A stretch of DNA of 64,000 bases, taken from assembly GCF_000143415.4 (NCBI RefSeq), contig NW_003314332.1, forward strand, positions 682,001 to 746,000, in the 5' to 3' direction. This document shows, piece by piece, positions 3,391 through 15,733 of this stretch; position 1 is the stretch's first letter, and every line of letters begins with the position of its first letter. A program made the position numbers and the translations under genes. The notes under the pieces were generated by a model that worked only from the letters and a program-made list of their open reading frames with translations, was not told where the DNA came from and made no database searches. Source of the DNA: Selaginella moellendorffii. Lineage: Eukaryota; Plantae; Lycopodiophyta.

Positions 3391-5889
3391 TCATCGATTC
3401 GTGGTGTTCCTTCTGGATCCCTGAATCTCCGTGTAGAGATTGGAGAGCAGTGTCAAGGAGGAGGAATCGGTGGAATCCCTGGACATGATCTCGTTGACAG
3501 CCGCAATCGCACCACGTCCTACATTTCCGTGGACTCTACACGCTCCCAGAAAGCTCGACCACAAAACACTATCAGGCTCGAAGGGCATGGATGCCACAAG
3601 GCCATCGGCGGCGGCGAGCTCCCCGGCGCGCCCAAGAACATCGATGAAGCACGCGTAGTGATCCACAGTAGCTTCGATTCCAAAATCCGCCCACATTCCA
3701 ACGAAGTAGCTCCTTCCCAATTCGACATCGCCCTTGTGGCTACACGCCGCAAGAACACTGACGAAGCTCACCTCGCTGGGCGTGAATCCCGCCTGGGCCA
3801 TGCGACCGAAGAACTCTAGCGTTTCATCGCCAGAGCACACTGCGAGCATCGAATTCCAGGACACTACGTCGCGATGCTCCATCCGCGAGAAGATCTTGTG
3901 GGAATCGGCGACGCTGCCGCAGCGCCTAAACATCGCAATGAGCGCATTCGACAGCATTGGATCGTCGCGTTCCAATCCTCGCACCGATACCTCGAATTGG
4001 ATCACGCGGCAGAGGGCCTCGATCCCTAGGGCAGCGCAGGCGGCAATGGCGGCCATGAATGTGATGTTGGTGAATTCCAGCCCTAGAACGTCCATGCCAC
4101 ACAGCACAGCCAACGCTTCTTTGCCATGCCCAAACTGGGCATATGCTGATGCCATGGCTGTCCACGTCACCACGTCCTTCTCAGGCATAGTATTGAAGAG
4201 CTCTTGTGCTTCTCGCATGTAACCTAATTGCGCGTATCCTACCAGGAGGCTTGTGTAGGTGATAATGTTTCTTTGTGTCATGAAATCAAACACACTCTTA
4301 GCCACGTCAAGATGCCCGCATTGGGCATATCCAGCGATTAATGCGTTCCCACTTACAACGTTAGAATGAGGATTTTGGTCATAGAGAATCTTGGCATGGG
4401 AAAGTTGATGTTGTGAGCAGTAAGCAGTGATCATGGTGTTCCAGGAGGCAGAATCTGGATTTGGGATCTGGTCGAAGAATTGCCGAGCTCGATGAACATC
4501 CCCTCCCTGGGCATATCCCGCAAGCATCGCATTCCAGGAGACGATGTTCTTCCGCGGGGCTGGAATCTGATCAAAAACGTTTCTGGCCTTTACGAGATCG
4601 TTGCTCTGCGTGTAGCCCGAAACGATCGAAGCCCAAGACACCGTATCTCTCTCCAGCATAGAATCAAACAACTCTTTCGCCTCGCGCACACAGCCATTTT
4701 GATTGTAGGCGATGATCATCGCATTGCAGGATCCAATCCCCGGGCTGGGGCCGATGGAATCAAAGAGGCGCCTCGAGGAATCAAGCTGCCCATACTGACC
4801 GTACGCAGAGATGATCGCGTTCCATGTAGCCTCCGTCCGATCGGGTACGGCGTCAAACAGCCGACGGGCGAGATGGAGCTGACCCTGCTGACCGTACATC
4901 GCGATCATGGTCGTCCACGTGACCACATCGCGGCCAGGCATCTCGTCAAACAGGGCTTGGGCTTCCAGTAAATGCCCAGCGCGGGCATTTGCCGAGAGAA
5001 GAATATTCCATGATATAACGTCTCTCTCGGGCATCTGGTGGAACAGGGCAAGGCATTCGCGGACATTGCCATCGTGGCAATAGGCGGAGAGGATGAGGTT
5101 CCAGGAGATTAGGTTTTCTCGATTCGCCACGCGATCGAAGAGCTCCCTTGCGCGATCGATGCTCTCGCCGTGTTGCGCGAGGCCGGCGAGGATGGAATTC
5201 GTCGATAGGTCGTCTCTTTCTGGCATCCGATCGAAGATTTCCTGTGCCTGGTAGACGCGGCCGTGGTGGGAGTAAGCAGCCAGGAGCGCGTTGTAGGAAA
5301 CGAGGTTGCGCTGGGGCATGGCGGTGAAGATCTGCTCGGCATCGCCAAGATTTCCAAGCCGGGCGTGTGCCGTGAGCATGGAATTCCAGGACACCAGATC
5401 TTTGTCCGGCATTCCATCGAAGAGATCTCTGGCTTCTTGGAGCTTCCCCGATCGCGAGCACGCGGCGATCAAGATATTCCAGGCCATCTCGTTCCTCTCC
5501 GGCATGCAGTGATCGAAGAAGGATTTGGCGTGGAGGATCTGGCCGGTGTGCGCGTAGGCGGCGAGAACGGAGGTCCAAGACACGACATTGGTGAGAGGCA
5601 TGCGATCCAGCGCGATCTTGGCGTCACTGGCGCTGCCGCGGCGGGCGTGGGTGGAGAGCGCGATGTTCCAGGAGAAGAGATTGGGGTGAGGGATCTGGGA
5701 GAAGACGAGGAGCGCGCGGTCGAGATGGCCGCAGTTGCGATACATCTCCATGACGAGATTGCACAGGAAGACATTGTGGCGGTGATTGGAGGCGAGGATC
5801 TGAGCGTGCAGCGCCTGGCCCTGTGCCACATTCTTGGATCTGGATGCCTGCTTGAGCAGCGCCGCGTAGTGATCTGTGTCGTGCATCAA
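3391..5889 (-). CDS. PLS-class PPR protein, E subgroup without DYW
   Basis: 832 aa intronless ORF of PPR repeats; C-terminal HYACFIDVLGRAG...WSSFLGAC...LLSNLY. Confidence 0.92.
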   Translation of the reverse strand: MMHDTDHYAALLKQASRSKNVAQGQALHAQILASNHRHNVFLCNLVMEMYRNCGHLDRALLVFSQIPHPNLFSWNIALSTHARRGSASDAKIALDRMPLTNVVSWTSVLAAYAHTGQILHAKSFFDHCMPERNEMAWNILIAACSRSGKLQEARDLFDGMPDKDLVSWNSMLTAHARLGNLGDAEQIFTAMPQRNLVSYNALLAAYSHHGRVYQAQEIFDRMPERDDLSTNSILAGLAQHGESIDRARELFDRVANRENLISWNLILSAYCHDGNVRECLALFHQMPERDVISWNILLSANARAGHLLEAQALFDEMPGRDVVTWTTMIAMYGQQGQLHLARRLFDAVPDRTEATWNAIISAYGQYGQLDSSRRLFDSIGPSPGIGSCNAMIIAYNQNGCVREAKELFDSMLERDTVSWASIVSGYTQSNDLVKARNVFDQIPAPRKNIVSWNAMLAGYAQGGDVHRARQFFDQIPNPDSASWNTMITAYCSQHQLSHAKILYDQNPHSNVVSGNALIAGYAQCGHLDVAKSVFDFMTQRNIITYTSLLVGYAQLGYMREAQELFNTMPEKDVVTWTAMASAYAQFGHGKEALAVLCGMDVLGLEFTNITFMAAIAACAALGIEALCRVIQFEVSVRGLERDDPMLSNALIAMFRRCGSVADSHKIFSRMEHRDVVSWNSMLAVCSGDETLEFFGRMAQAGFTPSEVSFVSVLAACSHKGDVELGRSYFVGMWADFGIEATVDHYACFIDVLGRAGELAAADGLVASMPFEPDSVLWSSFLGACRVHGNVGRGAIAAVNEIMSRDSTDSSSLTLLSNLYTEIQGSRRNTTNR

Positions 5890-6599: not shown

Positions 6600-8400
6600 A
6601 GGGTTTCTCATTCACACCTAACATTGTCTAAAATGTCTCCCTCTCCCACTTCTATCTTGTAGTCTACTTCTCTAGATCCACCTTTGGCTACAACATTTGA
6701 TAAATAATGCATTGTTAAAATATTATTTCCCCTTATACGGATACTCATAAAAATTAATTTATATGCCCCCCTTCGATAATGTATCCTCAAATATGGTGTC
6801 ATAGTTCCTTTTGGGGATTTAATGATTATATTACTTGTTATGAATCAGCCTCATAGAGCAGAGTAGGTAGCTTCAAGTTTTGCGGTGGAGTCACCTAGGA
6901 GGCTGACGGCCCAAAAGTAGTGCTAAGCATTCATGTTCATGGTTTCACAGGTGGCTTCAAATTTTGCGGTGGAGTCATTTGGGAAGTGAATAGCCCAAAA
7001 ACAACATCATGTGTTCGTGCTTGATTGATTGTCTTCATAAACAAAAATCCCCATAATTGCTTCAAGAATGTGACAAGGAGTTTTTTACACATATTCCATC
7101 TATGTTTTCATAAAACTTATAAATAAACTAGCAATGCAATATAAGGTTGTCAACAAGTTTAGTTGGCACTAGAGGCCTTAACAAGTTGTGGGGAACAAAA
7201 TCAAATCTTCTATATACAGAAGGTATAAGTAAAGGCTAACCATAAAAATGTTAAAAAGATTTTTATAATGGAGTATTTCTAATGCATTAATGTGAAGTTC
7301 AAAAAATGTAAGGGATAAAGGATAGAAATCTATTGTGCATTTCACTTGTTGATCTCTTAGGTATTTTACAAGAATTGTTATACAAATTTACTAAATGGCT
7401 TGTATTAGCTTTATGGAGTATTTAGCTTCCAAAGTTCCTAAAAATGTTCCTTTTATAAAACTGTATCAAATACTTTAAAGATAATCTGCACAACTATCTT
7501 TAGATTAAAAGCCTGTTTGGCCAATGGTTCATTTAGTGTTAATCTCACTCAAAAAGATAAGGTATGGCTCTATAATAGTTATAAATAATCTAGAGAATAT
7601 AAAGCTTACTATAATGGTTTAGTAATTTTCTAAGATCATAGAATTTATAAATTTGTAGATGGGAACCATATAATTCATTTGTTATTCTTGAGAGAAATCT
7701 TCATTTATTGTGGAGTATATGTGTAAGGGACTCTTTATATACTTGGAGCAATTTAGTTGTGAGACCTTGGGTATTTAGGGCTTCTTATTTGTGAAGGCAA
7801 TTAATCATAGTGAGAATGTATTAAAGCCTATAATTGGGAAGGGGTAGAGTCTCCTTCATGTTAGGTGTAAAGTAATCCAAGGTAATTCACCTAAATCTCA
7901 ATGCTATTCAAAAGAATAAACTTTACAAGCTTTTTGAAAATCTTGAAATCTTATTAAATGTTGTTTGAAGTTCCCGTACATTCTTTAAGTTCTTCTAGAT
8001 ATAGTGTCAATGTTATTTCTAATTATATAATTGTCAAAAATGTTGTTAAAAGATTATGGCATCAAGAACACATTTTTTAACTTTTTGTTCTTTAATTTAA
8101 TAAAGTTGATGACATTTGTCATTCCATTAAACATCTTTTGGGAGCCCATTAACATGATTTATTTTATATTGTGGAAAAGTGTATTAGGTAGCTATATTAA
8201 TGATGTGAAAGAGGAATAAAGCTTGCTTAGTAGGTGGTGTGGAGAAAACATTAAAGTTCTATAATTCTACCACCTATTACTAATAAATTTACCAATGATT
8301 TTATCTTATAGTTATTTAGCATCTAAGGCTTTTTGATTGTAAAGACAATAAAAATGTGTAGTATATGCTATTTTCACTATATACCTATGATGATTTATCA
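6600..8400 (-). mobile_element. Possible highly degraded Ty3/gypsy pol relic
   Basis: AT-rich; only short stop-riddled minus-strand motif echoes (IVKIAYTTHF ~8370, IMLMG ~8150, LPLPNYR ~7840) in RT-RNaseH order. Confidence 0.3.
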
Positions 8401-8889: not shown

Positions 8890-10898
8890 TTGTTTTGTTT
8901 CTTTGTGGACTTTTGTAAAGCATTTGACACAATCCCACAAAAGGAACTTTTTTAGTGACTTCAAAAGTTAAATACTCCACTAAAGTTGGTATAAAATATT
9001 TATAAACTCTTGAATTTTGACTTCTAGGGAAGTACACTTTTATTTATAAGTTGTAACTCTCTTGAAAGCCTCACTTTTTTGACATCCTGGAAGGTACACT
9101 CTTATTCATGGACCAAAGCTCTCGGGTTCCACTAAATATTAATCTCAACATATAATGTAATTCCCTTAGTCAATCAATAGAATATATCAATCTCAACATG
9201 TGATATGATTCCCCTAGTCAACTAATAGAGTCTAAATTCAAGACTTTTCTAATATCAAATATAAACTCTTAAATTTAAATTTCTCAAGAGGTCACCTAGC
9301 CCAATATCATTCATGTTTAACCCCAAATATTTTAACAATTGAAAAAGGGGGTGTATTCTTATTTATGAGCCATCCCTTTTATATTTGAACCCTTATATAG
9401 ATTATCTTTCAAATCACTCTTTTTAATCATTCAATAGATCTATATAATAATTCTTGTAGAATACTCAGAAAATCAACAAACAGAATGCACAATAAGTGTC
9501 AAGCAAGGTTATCCTTTATCCCCCACATTGTTTGGATTGCACATTGATGTATTGGAAACACTCTTTTGCAATGAAAATCTTTCCAACATTCTCATGGGTA
9601 GTCTCTACTTATACCTCCTATATGCAAATGATTTGCTCATGTCTTGTTAAAGCCTCCAACACTAGCTAGACTTGCTCGCAACCAGTAGTTTATCTATGAA
9701 TCTTATGAAAATATAGGTTATGGTATTTGGCCATCTATGATAAAGAAGTGACAAAAATGACCTCCATTGCCAACATTGGTTGCTGGTGATAAGAGAAAAC
9801 TACAAGTACCTTGTATATATAGTCCACCACAAGAATCCTTGGAAGGCTAGGACAACAGAATGCATCCAAGCAAGCACAAGAGCATATTACTCACTCTAGA
9901 GTGATCTCAAGCAAGCTGGTATTTTTCAATGGGATGCACATAGACAATATTACTAAAGGTGATCACTATCCTCACATATGCTAAGGAGGTTTAGGGTTGT
10001 AGACTACGACAAATGACATGGAGGAAAATGGAACAACTTAACTATTAGTTCTTGAATACAGAATTTGGATGCAACAAAGTGGCAATTGGGATTTTAATTA
10101 TGGAATCTAGCTTGCTTCTGATTGAACTCCGAAGTGTGAAAAACACAATGCAATACATCCTAAGTTGTACTGCTGGCAAGTGAACTTGAAGAAGGCAAAA
10201 GCTAAATCTGAGCCCTTCAACTGCTGTAGGACAATGACAACCAACACATTCCCCACCCAACCTCATATGCACTGCTCAAAATAAAATGGTTAAGTATGTT
10301 TTCTCAGATTTTATCAACCTTGCTAGAGATATCAGCAAAGGCTGGTGGCACAATCCTAGACAAAAGATTTGGGCAAGGATCTTGAGACCCTCCTTAAAGA
10401 AAATACCATAGATGTCCCAAACCATTGGCTTGAGTGAGCTTTCCAATGGTGGCTTCAAGGGGCTCAACACGATCCAAAATTCCAGCACTATTTATTAGTT
10501 ATCAACCTGCAAAGGCTTATTGGTATTGCTATTTACTGATCTATGGGACAACAGAATCCTGGCACACTATTGAGTGGGATAACATTGCCTGCACTCAGAA
10601 GTTAGGAGGACCAAATCTGTTATTTATACATTGAAGATAGTCAAACTGTCCTACACTTCACCACTGCATACAAACAACAATGGGACAAAGAACTGCTCCT
10701 TAATTTTGATTTGCCCCTCCCTCTCTTCCTCTAGCAATGGCAATACTAATGACTTTGTGAGTACCTTATTGCAACCACAAATTTGCACAATGAGCTACTT
10801 GCCATCCTTGAATTTACACATCCACAGTAGATAGGATGGTCTCATGCCCTTGGATCCTCATGACTTGAAATAGCTGTTATTATTATTATTATTATTAT
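8890..10898 (+). mobile_element. Degenerate non-LTR retrotransposon (LINE, RTE-like) RT remnant with (TTA)n tail
   Basis: FVDFCKAFDTIP at ~8900, SVKQGYPLSPTLFGLHID at ~9495, LLYANDL (YADD) at ~9615, NYKYL at ~9800, ending in a TTA tandem tail at 10877-10898. Confidence 0.65.
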
Positions 10899-11176
10899 GA
10901 CAATGGAGGATCTTTGCAATCCATTGCACTCTGCCATACCAGATTCAATCATTCCCCACACGGTTTAGAAATCACAGAAGTGGAAATACTTACAACCTAG
11001 AAGTTGTAAATTATAAGGGTAATGGTAACTGTAATGGAAAATATATCAAATTTCCTAAAATTTCGCCCTTAACGTTAAAGGTAAGCCCTAGGTCCTCACA
11101 TTCTTCTTTGCAAACCAATTGAGAGTTCTTAGCATTCTTATTAGTCTTATTAGAAAAAGAGACTGACGAAGTCCTT

Positions 11177-11758
11177 CTAAATGGACCATTCAAGCTGTAA
11201 GACCGTGGGTTCATCCTGGTCTTTGCCAACATATCTACAATCCACACCAAATTCCATGGCCAGCCCATTAATAAAGAAATAAATCTCCTCCCTCGGCACC
11301 TCCTTGAGCATAACCTTACTGCAAAACTCATGGTTTCCCGTGAGGAAAACAAAGTCTTCTCTATCCCAGCACCCGCTGATCCACTGCTGGAATGACTCTT
11401 TCGCTTCCTGGCCTAAGGTATCAAACCAGAGTTGCATGCTCCTCCAGTCCAGAAAAACGTCCCAAATAAAAGGTGTACAAACCTCGGGATCCTCCTCGTA
11501 CCAGCACCAACCTTCATCATCGTCGCGTTGCATACTGTTTGGAGCAAAGAATTGCGCGCCACCAACTATCATCCGCTGCTTCCAAGCTACCAGCATTGGC
11601 TCGGTTTCTAGGGTTTGAGCGGCAAGGCTGTCGCAGATGTAGGTCCTAGGGGAAGAGCACAGACGAGTGAATCTAAAAACGTAGCTGTGGATGTACCTTA
11701 TTTCAGAGCTCGGACGATTGATGATACCCATCCAGTGAGCTTTGTGCCATTGCAACAT
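11177..11758 (-). CDS. Uncharacterised protein homologous to the C-terminal (degenerate PIN-like) domain of the divergent gene; probable 51-nt intron 11646-11696
   Basis: Shares WHK..W, Y.CDS, AWK, FFAP.S, GW..Y, VFLTGN..F, GLAM.F..D.R, DEP.VL.L.WS with 12600-13084(+). An in-frame GTACAT...CCCTAG intron gives EIRTYICDS. Confidence 0.6.
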   Translation of the reverse strand: MLQWHKAHWMGIINRPSSEIRYIHSYVFRFTRLCSSPRTYICDSLAAQTLETEPMLVAWKQRMIVGGAQFFAPNSMQRDDDEGWCWYEEDPEVCTPFIWDVFLDWRSMQLWFDTLGQEAKESFQQWISGCWDREDFVFLTGNHEFCSKVMLKEVPREEIYFFINGLAMEFGVDCRYVGKDQDEPTVLQLEWSI

Positions 11759-11794
11759 TGAAAACCTACGGTTTATTAGGGCTCAGGGGAGATT

Positions 11795-12907
11795 ATGTTG
11801 TCGATGGAGCCACCGCCGATTGTTGCGAGTAGGGACATCTGTGTTGACACGAATCTCGTGATCTACTTCGTAGACGGCGATGCGAGTCCTCAGCTGGAAT
11901 CTTACCTCCGTGCATCGGTGGCCGCTGGAAGCAAGCTCTTGCTCACCAATGGCGTCTCGGGTTAGAGCTTAGTTTCTATGCTTTGATACTAAGTTTCTAG
12001 CTTTTTAGAGGAGCTGCGGCGCCTGCGCCCCACTTTCACCGGCACCTCGAGAGGTTTGACGTTCACACGATACTGTAACAGCGCACAGGAGGTAGCAGAC
12101 GCTGATCGAATTCTCCCGCTGGTGCGGCAGCAAGTCCACTATAACTTTGGTGGAATGCAGGTGAGTAATGCAGGATCTTTGCAGAACTGACTTTGTTTTG
12201 ATTGAATGCAGGTGACCGACTTGAGGATCGCACTTGAATCTTGCATGATCAGCAGTCGGGCTGAATATCATGGGCCTCGGACACTCTTCCTTCTGACCAA
12301 CGACAAGAAATTCGCGACAAGCTTCACTGTTGGGGGTCCTGGGTTGGTCGAGGTCCTAGCCGACCAATTGGCCGGTAACCTGTGTCCGGTGGTCTCCTTC
12401 CAGTCACTAGGCGCTGAGGCTTTCGTTCCAAGACGACGATCGCAGAAAACCACTGGCACCGCCGGTACCGGGCCTGGAAGTGGTAGAACCTCTGGTGGCA
12501 GCCCGCGGCCGCTCGGAGGCAGCAATCAGCATGGCGGCAAGGGAACTTCCGCTTCTGCTCCCAGTGTGGCATCTCCTGGACCTTCCAAGGTGTGGAAGCC
12601 GAAATCCAATTTGCTGGTGGAGCTACTTGCATGGCACAAAAGCTTGTGGATCAGCTTGAGCAGCAGGAAGCCGCTGGAAGTTCACTACTACTACTGTGAC
12701 AGCAGCGCGTTTGATGCGCTCCAGCGAGGTCCGCTGCGTGCATGGAAGAAAAGCCTCGGCAAAGTCTGCTTCTTTGCACCCTTGAGTGCTGTTAGGACTG
12801 GAGCAGCATCCGGGTGGTCTCCCTACCGAAACAAGTACGGGATCGAGCTTTCAGGTTTTAACGATGGTGGTGACGAACTTCATTGCTGCATCGGCTACTG
12901 CTCCTGA
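11795..12907 (+). CDS. PIN/VapC-like ribonuclease-domain protein; exons 11795-11960, 12009-12160, 12212-12907 (~337 aa); homology continues past frameshifts to 13084
   Basis: Spliced translation: DICVDTNLVIYF...LLLTNGVSEELRR...MQVTDLRIALESC...LFLLTNDKKF, the D/E/D/TxD acidic quartet of PIN domains; GT-AG introns of 48 and 51 nt. Confidence 0.7.
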
Positions 12908-13139
12908 CGAGAGGCCCGTGTTCCTCACTGGCAATGCCAAGTTCGCCAAACGGTTCAGGAAAGAAGCATTTCGTGAAGCCGTCTACCAGGGCTAGCAATG
13001 CCGTTCCTGATTGACGTCCGAATGATCGATGGGACGAAGGACGAGCCTCAAGTGCTGGAATTGCAGTGGTCAGGTGCGAATTAATCAGCGCGTCCGAGAA
13101 GAATTTTGGAGCCTGTAAATTTTGAGAGACTGTCAACGC

Positions 13140-14199
13140 GAAACGTTACCGCGTCCTCCGTTCGATCGGGCACGGCAGTCGAACAGCTGACGGGCAAGAT
13201 GGAGCTGACCGTGCTGACCGTACGGTCGTCCACGTGACCACGGTGACCGCATCGCGGCATCTCGTCAAACAGGGCTTTCAGTAAATGCCCAGTTCGGGCA
13301 TATGCCGCGAGAAGAATATTCCATGAGATAACGTCTCTCTCGGGCATCTGGTGAAACAGGGCAAGCCATTCGCGGACATTGCCATCGTGGGAGAGGATGA
13401 GGTTCCAGGAGATTAGGTTTTCTCGATTCGCCACGCGATCGAAGAGCTCCCTCGCGCGATCGATGCTCGCGCCGTGTTGCGCGAGGCCGGCGAGGATGGA
13501 ATTCGCCGATAGGTCGTCTCTTTCCGGCATCCGATCGAAGATTTCCTGTGCCTGGTCGACGCGGCCGTGGTGGGAGTAAGCAGCCAGGAGCGCGTTGTAG
13601 GAAACGAGGTTGCGCTGGGGCATGGCGGTGAAGATCTGCTCGGCATCGCCAAGATTTCCAAGCCGGGCGTGTGCCGTGAGCATGGAATTCCAGGACACCA
13701 GATCTTTGTCCGGCATTCCATCGAAGAGATCTCTGGCTTCTTGGAGCTTCCCCGATCGCGAGCACGCGGGGATCAAGATATTCCAGGCCATCTCGTTCCT
13801 CTCCGGCATGCAGTGATCGAAGAAGGATTTGGCGTGGAGGATCTGGCCGGTGTGCGCGTAGGCGGCGAGCACGGAGGTCCAAGACACGACATTGGTGATA
13901 GGCATGCGATCCAGCGCGATCTTGGCGTCACTGGCGCTGCCGCGGCGGGCGTGGGTGGAGAGCACGATGTTCCAGGAGAAGAGATTGGGGTGAGGGATGT
14001 GGGAGAAGACGAGGAGCGCGCGGTCGAGATGGCCGCAGTTGCGATGCATCTCCATGACGAGATTGCACAGGAAGACATTGTGGCGGTGATCGGAGGCAAG
14101 GATCTGAGCGTGCAGTGCCTGGCCCTGTGCCACATTCTTGGATCTGGATGCCTGCTTGAGCAGCGCCGCGTAGCGATCGCGATCCGTGTGGTCCAACAT
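13140..14199 (-). pseudogene. Truncated duplicate of the 5' ~1.06 kb of the PPR gene at 3391-5889
   Basis: Near-identical DNA to ~4820-5880 with small deletions and a frameshift near 13250; lacks the C-terminal half. Confidence 0.85.
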
Positions 14200-14240
14200 A
14201 GACTTGGGAGTTTTAGGGTTCTTGGAGGAAGCTTTGAGCG

Positions 14241-15733
14241 ATGGCGGAGGAGCTGGATGAGCTCTTGATGTTCCTTTCTTCGCCAGCGCCAAACGTAAGA
14301 GTTTGTTTCCATTTCATTGCGCCTGACAAGAGCTCCTTTCGCAGCTTAGAAAGGCCGCGGTAGACATCATCGAAGGCTTGACTGGAAGCGACGAGGGGAT
14401 TGCCAAGCTCAGCACCAAGCTCTCGATTCTCCTCCCGGCTCTCGTACAGCTCCTTGCTGGTAACAAGGCAAGAAGCGGATCCATGTCTAGTGCCTAAAAG
14501 CCTGTGAATGATCTTACGTCCAGCTCGTTGCGAAGCCAGCGGCAGGAGCTCTGGTCAATCTGTCACAGGATCAGGAAGTGGGAGAGATGCTGCTTGAACT
14601 GGGAGCTGTTGCAAGCGCCATGGATCAGATAGGCAAGCAAGGCCAGGACGTGGATAAGCTCATGGTGATGCTCCTCGTGAACTTGACGACTCTAGAGCCT
14701 GGTGCTCGGCTGCTATGCGAGGTGTGATGCTTGCTCTCCTTCGCCATCTCCAAATCTCTCTTACAATTTTCTTGCTAGGAGGGCGATGAGAAGCTCAAAG
14801 GACTACATATGAGTCGTCTCGTGAGATTGTTCTCGCGGACCCCAGAAGAAGGTATGATAAGAAAGCTGTTCTTGTACACTACCTGTGTGTGTTGCGTAGG
14901 TGACGATGCGTACGAGCACGTTGGAGCAATTCTTGTCAACGTATCGCGAACGGACTTGGGACGCAAGCTCATGCTGGACACCAAGCGAGGCCTCTTGAAA
15001 CAGGTTTTACGCCAATGCGACTCCAAGAGTCTTGTTCGCAGGCGAGGAGTAAGTTGATGAAAAAATCTGTTTCGTTAGATAAGTTTTGCGACTTTCTCAT
15101 CTTTGTTCTTCGTGCGCAGGTGATTGGCACCATCCGCAACTGTTGTTTTGAAGCTCCGTCCCATCTGCCGAGCTTGCTTTCCCTGTCCGAGCTTCTGTGG
15201 CCATGTCTCATCCTTCCAGCCGCAGGAAGCAAGGTCTTACTCAATTGTTGCACCATTGCGGGAATTCAGCTAAGCCCTCTCTCGTCGACGTGATGCCGCA
15301 GATCTATAGCGAAGAGGAGCGATCCAAGATGCCCCCGGAGCTGGCGGTTCCATTGTCCATAGAACGCCAGGCGGAACCAGACTCCCAGATCCGTCGCGAA
15401 GCCTTGGATGCTCTCTACCTGCTCATAAAGCAGGTGAAGTGAAGCGCTAGACTTTCTAGATCCGATCCCCAGGGCTGATTTTGTGGTCGTGTACCAGGAG
15501 GCTGGATTTAGAGCGTTTTGGGAGCTCGGTGGAGCCGACGTTCTCAAGTCCGGCTACGAGAACGAAGAAGATCCGGAAGTCATGGACAAGTACGAGCAGC
15601 TGGGGTCACTGGTAAGAACTGACACACACGCACTTCTTTTTTTCTCCCTGCATGCGCGTACGTATCAAACTCAAACACATTCTTCTACGCGTGCGCGTCA
15701 CAGATCATCGCGCAGAGTGGCAGCAGCTCTTGA
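14241..15733 (+). CDS. HGH1: HGH1/FAM203 homolog (eEF2 chaperone), multi-exon
   Basis: MAEELDELLMFLSSPAPN|LRKAAVDIIEGLTGSDEG..., ALVNLSQ, LMVMLLVNLT, YEHVGAILVNVS, GTIRNCCFE, GYENEEDPEVM; short GT-AG introns. Confidence 0.85.

What the first reader, a model, noticed from the sequence alone, without database searches (positions are those of the whole stretch)
11795..13084. Cryptic intron-split VapC-like PIN nuclease gene
Seen: splicing two short introns yields a compact PIN domain with all four catalytic-type acids (VDTN, VSEEL, TDLRIA, LTNDKKF), then a G/S/P linker and a second, degenerate PIN-like domain (YYYCDSS...FIAASA...FLTGNAKF) broken by two frameshifts. Known: this motif spacing typifies VapC toxins, while familiar eukaryotic PINs (NOB1, UTP24, SMG6, RRP44) have other architectures. 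Inference: a lineage-specific or horizontally acquired RNase, possibly a defence or toxin effector.
Basis: partly seen in the sequence, partly recalled or inferred. Interest (0 to 1): 0.8.

Follow-up and report, generated by a model that had tools for sequence, protein, structure and literature searches.

The report
Orphan PIN-like RNase gene in Selaginella
This is a real, already annotated and weakly transcribed spikemoss gene whose first 150 residues look like a small VapC-type PIN ribonuclease with no detectable relatives anywhere, fused to a second domain that is cut short by frameshifts and has an intact, better-expressed copy next door.

Summary
The sequence observation holds. The window is Selaginella moellendorffii nuclear DNA.

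- **Transcription:** a transcript contig joins exon 2 to exon 3 across intron 2. Contigs stop at both edges of intron 1.
- **PIN domain:** residues 1-165 carry the acidic set D15, E53/E54, D106, D134. Pfam, NCBIfam, PADLOC, PHROGs and PDB sequences give nothing. An exhaustive phmmer scan of 1.84 billion proteins found only the protein itself. The PIN fold rests on the ESM Atlas alone (TM 0.68 to a VapC cluster; every named neighbour is in the PIN clan). AlphaFold2 without an alignment failed.
- **Second domain:** it is homologous (35% identity) to the divergently transcribed neighbour LOC112340870 at 11177-11758, but only across two frame switches. The first is also present in RNA. No tool supports a PIN fold for this domain.
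- **Origin and role:** horizontal transfer, toxin or defence roles have no support.

Best reading: a lineage-specific PIN-like RNase gene, possibly decaying. Other first-reader notes of this scan mention PIN-like genes elsewhere in this genome; I did not check them. Interest is modest.

The parts
11795..11960 (+). Exon 1 of SELMODRAFT_425059 (the GenBank model starts at ATG 11804). It holds motif 1 (CVDTN, D15) and the first base of the E53 codon.
   Evidence: Translation; identical to P0001. Transcript contig 11787-11954 and minus-first-mate reads.
11961..12008 (+). Intron 1, 48 nt, GT...AG. If it is retained, the frame stops after 56 residues.
   Evidence: RNA contigs end at 11954 and restart at 12010, with none inside the intron. 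No read bridges the junction directly.
12009..12160 (+). Exon 2, with motif 2 (SEEL, E53/E54) and the helical middle of the PIN-like domain.
12161..12211 (+). Intron 2, 51 nt, GT...AG.
   Evidence: A transcript contig of run X1 joins 12152 to 12204 (the cut can slide by +8, giving 12160/12212), skipping 51 nt with GT..AG ends.
12212..12907 (+). Exon 3 up to the annotated stop (TGA 12905-12907). It holds motif 3 (TDLRIA, D106), motif 4 (LLTNDKKF, D134), the G/S/P-rich linker (about 12395-12600) and the first ~100 residues of domain 2.
   Evidence: RNA contig 12359-12987 is colinear with the genome, with 0 differences and 0 gaps.
11828..12360 (+). PIN-like (VapC-type) domain, about residues 9-150 of P0001, split by the two introns.
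   Evidence: ESM Atlas structure and feature neighbours; motif set. No HMM support.
12590..13084 (+). Domain 2, homologous to the neighbour's product P0002. It reads in frame 0, then +1 (about 12861-12992), then 0 again (12992-13084). The two frame switches lie at about 12830-12885 and 12975-12995. The annotated protein ends inside this domain.
   Evidence: BLASTP and tblastn against the minus-strand ORF in three pieces. 35% identity over 147 columns when read through with X at each break.
11177..11758 (-). Neighbour gene LOC112340870 (P0002, XP_024515786.1), a stand-alone intact copy of domain 2. It has one 51-nt GT-AG intron at 11646-11696. The in-frame ATG at 11758 precedes the RefSeq start at 11731. 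It is transcribed divergently from the PIN gene, and the start codons are 36 bp apart.
   Evidence: Joint seen in 6+2 stranded reads, with depth up to about 7 against about 1-4 for the PIN gene.

Best explanation
A lineage-specific Selaginella gene encodes a small VapC-type PIN-like metal-dependent endoribonuclease domain of about 150 residues. A disordered G/S/P linker joins it to a second domain of unknown fold.

Inferred mechanism: the four acidic residues (D15, E53/E54, D106, D134) hold Mg2+ or Mn2+ at the C-terminal edge of a parallel beta-sheet and cleave single-stranded RNA, as in other PIN nucleases.

The second domain has suffered two frame switches, so the expressed protein is cut short within it. 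An intact stand-alone paralog of that domain is transcribed divergently from the shared 5' region and at a higher level.

The gene is either a still-working truncated RNase or a young pseudogene in decay. I put these at roughly even odds.

Shown: the gene model, splicing of intron 2, transcription of both genes in the expected orientations, homology of domain 2 to the neighbour, the first frame switch in RNA, and the absence of detectable relatives.

Inferred: the PIN fold (predicted models only), catalysis, RNA as the substrate, and any link between the two genes.
For: - The gene model is identical to GenBank EFJ12860.1 / UniProt D8SRW5, 'PIN domain-containing protein'.
- Intron 2 is joined in a transcript contig. 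Contigs break at both edges of intron 1. Stranded reads lie on both genes in the expected orientations.
- ESM Atlas, residues 1-165: the three best structure rows are PIN/VapC clusters (TM by query 0.68, 0.60, 0.59), and every named family among the 100 feature neighbours is in the PIN clan (PIN_halo, PIN, PIN_3, PIN_4, PIN_5, DUF4411).
- Internal control: the same tool on residues 225-334 and on P0002 gives no PIN neighbour.
- The acidic residues sit where PMC5499597 places them: after strand 1, after strand 2, at the N-terminus of helix 4 and after strand 4.
- Domain 2 is 35% identical to P0002 across two frame switches.
Against: - No HMM library or PDB sequence match even at E<=10.
- AlphaFold2 without an alignment gave a junk model (pLDDT 46), and its Foldseek hits were meaningless. 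The fold therefore rests on one language-model source.
- With no homolog anywhere, conservation and selection cannot be assessed.
- The basis of UniProt's name could not be checked here.
- Expression is low: depth 0-4 in 12% of two RNA runs.
- The frame switches in the same gene suggest relaxed constraint.
Confidence: 0.6

Rival explanations
1. Decaying pseudogene. A once two-domain gene has lost its reading frame in domain 2, and the N-terminal ORF and weak transcription are leftovers without function.
For: Two frame switches relative to the intact paralog, the first confirmed in RNA. Low read depth compared with the neighbour. No allele, paralog or ortholog in the protein collections. Only the 2010 GenBank model, and no RefSeq protein, is in the cluster. 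The locus borders a rearranged region holding a PPR gene fragment duplicate.
Against: The PIN exons keep an open frame, canonical splice sites and all four acidic residues. Intron 2 is still spliced. A truncated C-terminal domain need not abolish the N-terminal domain.
Confidence: 0.3
2. Toxin-antidote-like gene pair. The PIN RNase is a toxin, and the divergently transcribed stand-alone copy of its partner domain neutralises it.
For: The neighbour is a paralog of the very domain fused to the PIN domain, which is a domain-fusion argument for interaction. The start codons are 36 bp apart and the 5' transcripts overlap. The neighbour is expressed more strongly.
Against: Nothing beyond the arrangement supports it. 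The neighbour has no known antitoxin or DNA-binding domain. No mobile-element borders surround the pair. Neither protein has relatives, so co-occurrence cannot be tested.
Confidence: 0.05
3. Not a PIN domain. It is an orphan or de novo coding sequence whose motifs resemble PIN by chance, and the language-model match is a false lead.
For: No HMM or PDB sequence match. AlphaFold2 gave no confident fold. The Atlas feature score of 0.88 is below its own 0.9 lead threshold, and only 115-123 of 256 features are shared.
Against: Atlas structure match with TM 0.59-0.68 to three different PIN clusters. The four motifs occur in the canonical order and spacing, in 0 of 200,000 shuffles. The control regions give no PIN hits.
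Confidence: 0.12
4. Recent horizontal acquisition of a bacterial or archaeal vapC gene.
For: Only the small size and the VapC-like motif spacing. The Atlas neighbours are all prokaryotic, but that tool warns this is no sign of transfer.
Against: No prokaryotic relative at E<=1e-3 by exhaustive phmmer, by the genome-contig scan or by tblastn on plasmids. The gene has two spliceosomal introns and lies among ordinary plant genes (PPR, Cyt-b5, DUF383/384).
Confidence: 0.03

Closest known systems
VapC toxins / minimal PIN domains (Pfam PF01850, PIN_halo PF26425; VapC-like group of the PIN-like superfamily, PMC5499597)
   Same: About 140-150 residue domain. The acidic residues follow strand 1, strand 2, the start of helix 4 and strand 4, with spacing like VapC. 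They are the best structural neighbours in the ESM Atlas (TM 0.59-0.68).
   Different: No significant sequence match to any PIN model. Eukaryotic gene with two introns. Fused to a linker and a second domain. No upstream VapB-type antitoxin and no operon. The gap between the third and fourth acidic residues is 28 residues.
Eukaryotic housekeeping PIN proteins (NOB1, Fcf1/Utp24, SMG6, Rrp44/Dis3, Swt1)
   Same: They belong to the same superfamily and to the VapC-like structural group (PMC5499597).
   Different: No hit to their Pfam families and no ortholog. Different architecture. Those proteins are conserved across eukaryotes, whereas this one is a singleton.
Inactive PIN paralogs paired with active ones (Utp23 beside Utp24, per PMC5499597)
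   Same: Domain 2 has short motif echoes (YYCDS, NFIAASA, FLTGNxxF).
   Different: No tool supports a PIN fold for domain 2 or for P0002. The resemblance is at motif level only.

Membership tests
PIN domain-like superfamily (VapC-like group) | Three-layer alpha/beta/alpha fold with a parallel beta-sheet | tested here: met
   The ESM Atlas model of this protein, residues 9-165, aligns to VapC/PIN clusters with TM 0.68/0.66, 0.60/0.65 and 0.59/0.68. These are predicted models only. AlphaFold2 without an alignment was uninformative (pLDDT 46).
PIN domain-like superfamily (VapC-like group) | At least four acidic residues: after S1, after S2, at the N-terminus of H4 and after S4 (PMC5499597) | tested here: met
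   D15 (ICVD), E53/E54 (after KLLLT), D106 (TDLRIALE) and D134 (FLLTND). The ordered motif set occurs in 0 of 200,000 shuffles. Their spatial clustering could not be checked because no coordinates are available.
PIN domain-like superfamily (VapC-like group) | Significant match to a curated PIN family model (PF01850, PF13470, PF13638, PF26425 and others) | tested here: not met
   hmmscan of P0001 and of residues 1-165 against Pfam-A at E<=10 gave 0 families. NCBIfam, PADLOC and PHROGs also gave none.
PIN domain-like superfamily (VapC-like group) | Metal-dependent nuclease activity | not testable with these tools
   Needs a recombinant protein assay with acidic-residue mutants.
VapBC type II toxin-antitoxin module | Small antitoxin gene with a DNA-binding domain immediately upstream in the same operon | tested here: not met
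   The only close neighbour is divergently transcribed, 167-176 aa, contains an intron and has no Pfam or NCBIfam domain.
VapBC type II toxin-antitoxin module | Stand-alone PIN toxin of about 130-150 aa | tested here: not met
   The PIN-like domain is the N-terminus of a 334-aa protein with a linker and a second domain.
Housekeeping eukaryotic PIN proteins (NOB1, Fcf1/Utp24, SMG6, Rrp44) | Orthology, meaning detectable homology to these conserved families | tested here: not met
   No Pfam hit. Exhaustive phmmer finds only the protein itself and one spurious repeat protein.

The most novel reading that the evidence does not exclude
A plant nuclear toxin-antidote-like pair. An orphan VapC-type RNase would be held in check by a partner domain that exists both fused in cis (now frameshifted) and as a divergently transcribed stand-alone gene sharing its promoter region. 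If the other PIN-like genes that this scan's first readers noted in the same genome are real, it could be one of several such fast-evolving genes in Selaginella.
Probability: 0.06. Interest if true: 0.75.

Novelty: new member of a known kind. Interest (0 to 1): 0.35.

Why it matters
Minimal VapC-type PIN domains are typical of prokaryotic toxin-antitoxin systems. The eukaryotic PIN proteins considered here (NOB1, Utp24/Fcf1, SMG6, Rrp44) are conserved parts of RNA processing and decay machinery. A stand-alone-style PIN domain that is an absolute orphan in a lycophyte, sits beside a paralog of its own partner domain and is caught in partial decay would be a small example of birth and death of nuclease genes in plants. 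It could also be an entry point to lineage-specific RNA cleavage or conflict systems. As it stands it is an annotated, unstudied gene whose fold assignment rests on predicted models only. It is worth a cheap expression and RNase test, but it is not a major surprise.

Tried and rejected
- **Family libraries on the separate exon pieces and on P0001:** Pfam, NCBIfam, PADLOC and PHROGs gave nothing useful. The weak DUF5619 (E 0.06) and phrog_38192 (E 0.28) hits are noise.
- **PDB sequence search:** only antibody light chains at E about 0.5.
- **Exhaustive phmmer of residues 1-165:** the protein itself plus P0003, a repetitive bacterial surface protein hit over 44 residues. I rejected this as spurious.
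- **Word-index searches:** three queries (the exon-3 ORF, the neighbour ORF and the whole of P0001) returned only the two Selaginella proteins themselves. No allele or paralog appeared.
- **Prokaryotic searches:** tblastn on 72,556 plasmids gave no VapC under any weak hit. The scan of prokaryotic species genomes confirmed none of 600 pattern matches.
- **AlphaFold2:** residues 1-165 as a single sequence gave pLDDT 46. P0002 with its three window fragments gave pLDDT 39. Both models are unusable, and Foldseek on the first returned only proteasome subunits at TM 0.3.
- **hhalign of domain 1 against the domain-2 alignment:** probability 0.3%, so an internal PIN duplication is not supported.
- **Complex prediction of residues 1-165 with P0002:** no verdict (score 0.00, partner fold uncertain). 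This is evidence neither for nor against binding.
- **Attempt to fetch a bona fide vapC gene:** I wanted one for a local unfiltered HMM test and read the whole annotation of plasmid pUTI89. It has none (my recollection was wrong), and I dropped the idea.
- **Mobile-element borders:** I looked for borders around the gene pair and found none. The only flanking repeat is a PPR gene fragment duplicate.
- **Literature:** no paper mentions the locus tag or the accessions.

Full report
**Where we are.** The window is nuclear DNA of Selaginella moellendorffii, scaffold GL377636.1, at about 683.8-704.9 kb for the central part. This follows from the exact match of the region's product to SELMODRAFT_425059. 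The surroundings are ordinary plant genes: three PPR genes, a DUF383/DUF384 gene, a cytochrome b5 gene, a WW-domain gene and an Rtf2 gene.

**The observation.**
- The two introns are GT...AG, 48 and 51 nt. Removing them gives one frame from ATG 11795 to TGA 12905-12907.
- GenBank protein EFJ12860.1 (P0001, 334 aa, start at the second ATG, 11804) uses exactly these two introns. UniProt D8SRW5 is already named 'PIN domain-containing protein'. The gene is therefore not cryptic.
- In P0001 numbering the four motifs place D15 (ICVDTN), E53/E54 (GVSEEL), D106 (TDLRIA) and D134 (LLTNDKKF). The E53 codon is assembled by splicing intron 1.
- A pattern for the four motifs in order and spacing matched none of 200,000 shuffles of the domain and none of the 183 other long six-frame ORFs of the window. 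The pattern was written after the fact.

**Transcription.**
- In transcript-like contigs of run X1, one contig joins 12152 to 12204. The cut can slide to 12160/12212, it skips 51 nt and the ends are GT..AG. Intron 2 is therefore spliced.
- Contigs end at 11954 and restart at 12010, and none lies inside intron 1. This fits splicing, but no read bridges that junction.
- A 629-nt contig (12359-12987) is colinear with the genome without any difference. No further intron rescues the frame, and the first frame switch is present in RNA too. The second, at about 12975-12995, lies at that contig's end and is covered by only one or two raw reads.
- Stranded raw reads put the PIN gene's RNA on the + strand at depth 0-4. 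The neighbour's RNA is on the - strand at depth up to about 7, from about 12% of each run.

**The N-terminal domain.**
- Sequence methods find nothing. Pfam-A, NCBIfam, PADLOC and PHROGs give no family at E<=10. PDB sequences give only noise.
- An exhaustive phmmer scan of 1.84 billion representative proteins finds only the protein itself and a spurious repeat protein. Word searches find no allele or paralog.
- No prokaryotic genome or plasmid encodes a relative.
- AlphaFold2 without an alignment gives an unusable model (pLDDT 46), and Foldseek on that model is meaningless.
- The one positive result is the ESM Atlas. Its own model of this protein, residues 9-165, aligns with TM 0.68/0.66 over 137 residues to a VapC toxin cluster, and with TM 0.60 and 0.59 to two further PIN clusters.
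- Among the 100 nearest clusters by language-model features, every named family belongs to the PIN clan. The top score is 0.88, below the tool's own 0.9 mark.
- As an internal control, the same tool gives no PIN neighbour for residues 225-334 (best score 0.76, mixed folds at TM below 0.5) or for the neighbour protein.
- The acidic residues sit where the PIN-like superfamily has them: after S1, after S2, at the N-terminus of H4 and after S4, with at least four needed for activity (PMC5499597).
- I take the PIN fold as likely, about 0.75. It is not proven, because it rests on predicted models from one source plus a motif argument.

**The second domain.**
- The part after the G/S/P linker is homologous to the ORF on the opposite strand at 11177-11758.
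- The neighbour is RefSeq LOC112340870 (P0002, 167 aa). It has one 51-nt GT-AG intron at 11646-11696, seen in eight stranded reads.
- An in-frame ATG at 11758 lies nine codons before the RefSeq start. Homology to the PIN gene's domain 2 (LQWHKAHW against LAWHKSLW) already covers those codons, so 11758 is probably the true start.
- Read through with X at each break, domain 2 of the PIN gene is 35% identical to P0002 over 147 columns, but in frames 0, +1 and 0. The annotated protein therefore ends about 20 codons after the first switch and lacks the last third of the domain.
- The pieces after each switch are still recognisably similar to P0002. The switches are thus younger than the duplication.
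- Whether this domain is a degenerate PIN cannot be settled. It has motif echoes in the right order (YYCDS, FFAPxS, NFIAASA, FLTGNxxF, with N in place of D).
- Against that, hhalign against domain 1 gives probability 0.3%, the Atlas gives no PIN neighbour and AlphaFold2 gives no fold.

**Arrangement.** The two genes are head to head, with 36 bp between ATG 11758 (-) and ATG 11795 (+). Minus-gene reads extend to about 11930 and plus-gene reads begin near 11760-11790, so the 5' ends of the transcripts appear to overlap. Coverage here is low.

**Mechanism.**
- The most likely working model is a metal-dependent endoribonuclease of the PIN type, in which the acidic residues coordinate Mg2+ or Mn2+.
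- PIN domains usually act as dimers or with partner domains (general knowledge of VapC and PIN structures). The fused second domain may have been a partner or regulator, a role that the stand-alone paralog could still play in trans. Both of these points are inference.
- The complex prediction gave no verdict and counts neither way.
- The frame switches, the low expression and the lack of any relative make a gene in decay a serious alternative.

**Comparison and novelty.**
- It works like, and probably folds like, a VapC-type PIN domain.
- It is not a member of any curated PIN family by sequence, it is not a VapBC module and it is not an ortholog of the housekeeping eukaryotic PINs.
- Horizontal transfer has no support.
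- No paper mentions the gene.
- Other first-reader notes of this scan report PIN-like genes elsewhere in the same genome. They share no detectable sequence similarity with this one by my searches, and I could not inspect them.

**Verdict.** This is a new, orphan member of a known kind, and interest is modest.

**Handling of the broken frame.** I read domain 2 through only with X at each break.

Noticed in passing
window:13155-14178 and window:4830-5874: The PPR ORF at 13081-14292 (-), 403 aa here and annotated as 372 aa, contains a 1-kb stretch that is a 94% identical duplicate of the 5' part of the 832-aa PPR gene at 3391-5889 (-). It looks like a truncated PPR duplicate. Its left border (13155) lies 70 nt from the end of the PIN gene's domain-2 homology, so the PIN gene's 3' end borders a rearrangement.
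   Followed up: partly
window:7195-9642: An AT-rich stretch (GC about 0.32) has long imperfect inverted repeats. Arms of about 280 nt at 7195-7477 pair with 8916-8979 and 9428-9642 at 76-81% complementarity. This looks like a foldback or MITE-type element between the PPR gene and the PIN-neighbour gene.
   Followed up: no
window:11731-11758 (-): The RefSeq model of LOC112340870 starts at the ATG at 11731. An in-frame ATG at 11758 adds nine residues that are already homologous to the paralogous domain of the PIN gene, so the annotated start is probably too far downstream.
   Followed up: partly
window:11757-11930: Stranded reads of both orientations overlap here. The 5' ends of the two divergent transcripts seem to overlap head to head over the PIN gene's first exon, which could form natural antisense RNA. 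Depth is only 1-4 reads.
   Followed up: no
window:1137-5889 (-): Two long intronless PPR genes (748 and 832 aa) lie in tandem. The second has an E motif. With the fragment at 13081-14292 this makes three PPR genes within 14 kb.
   Followed up: partly
sequencing-run table, run X8: A run labelled as a different organism (coded B) holds about 5% of the sampled words of 11100-13200. This hints that part of the stretch exists near-identically in a related species.
   Followed up: no
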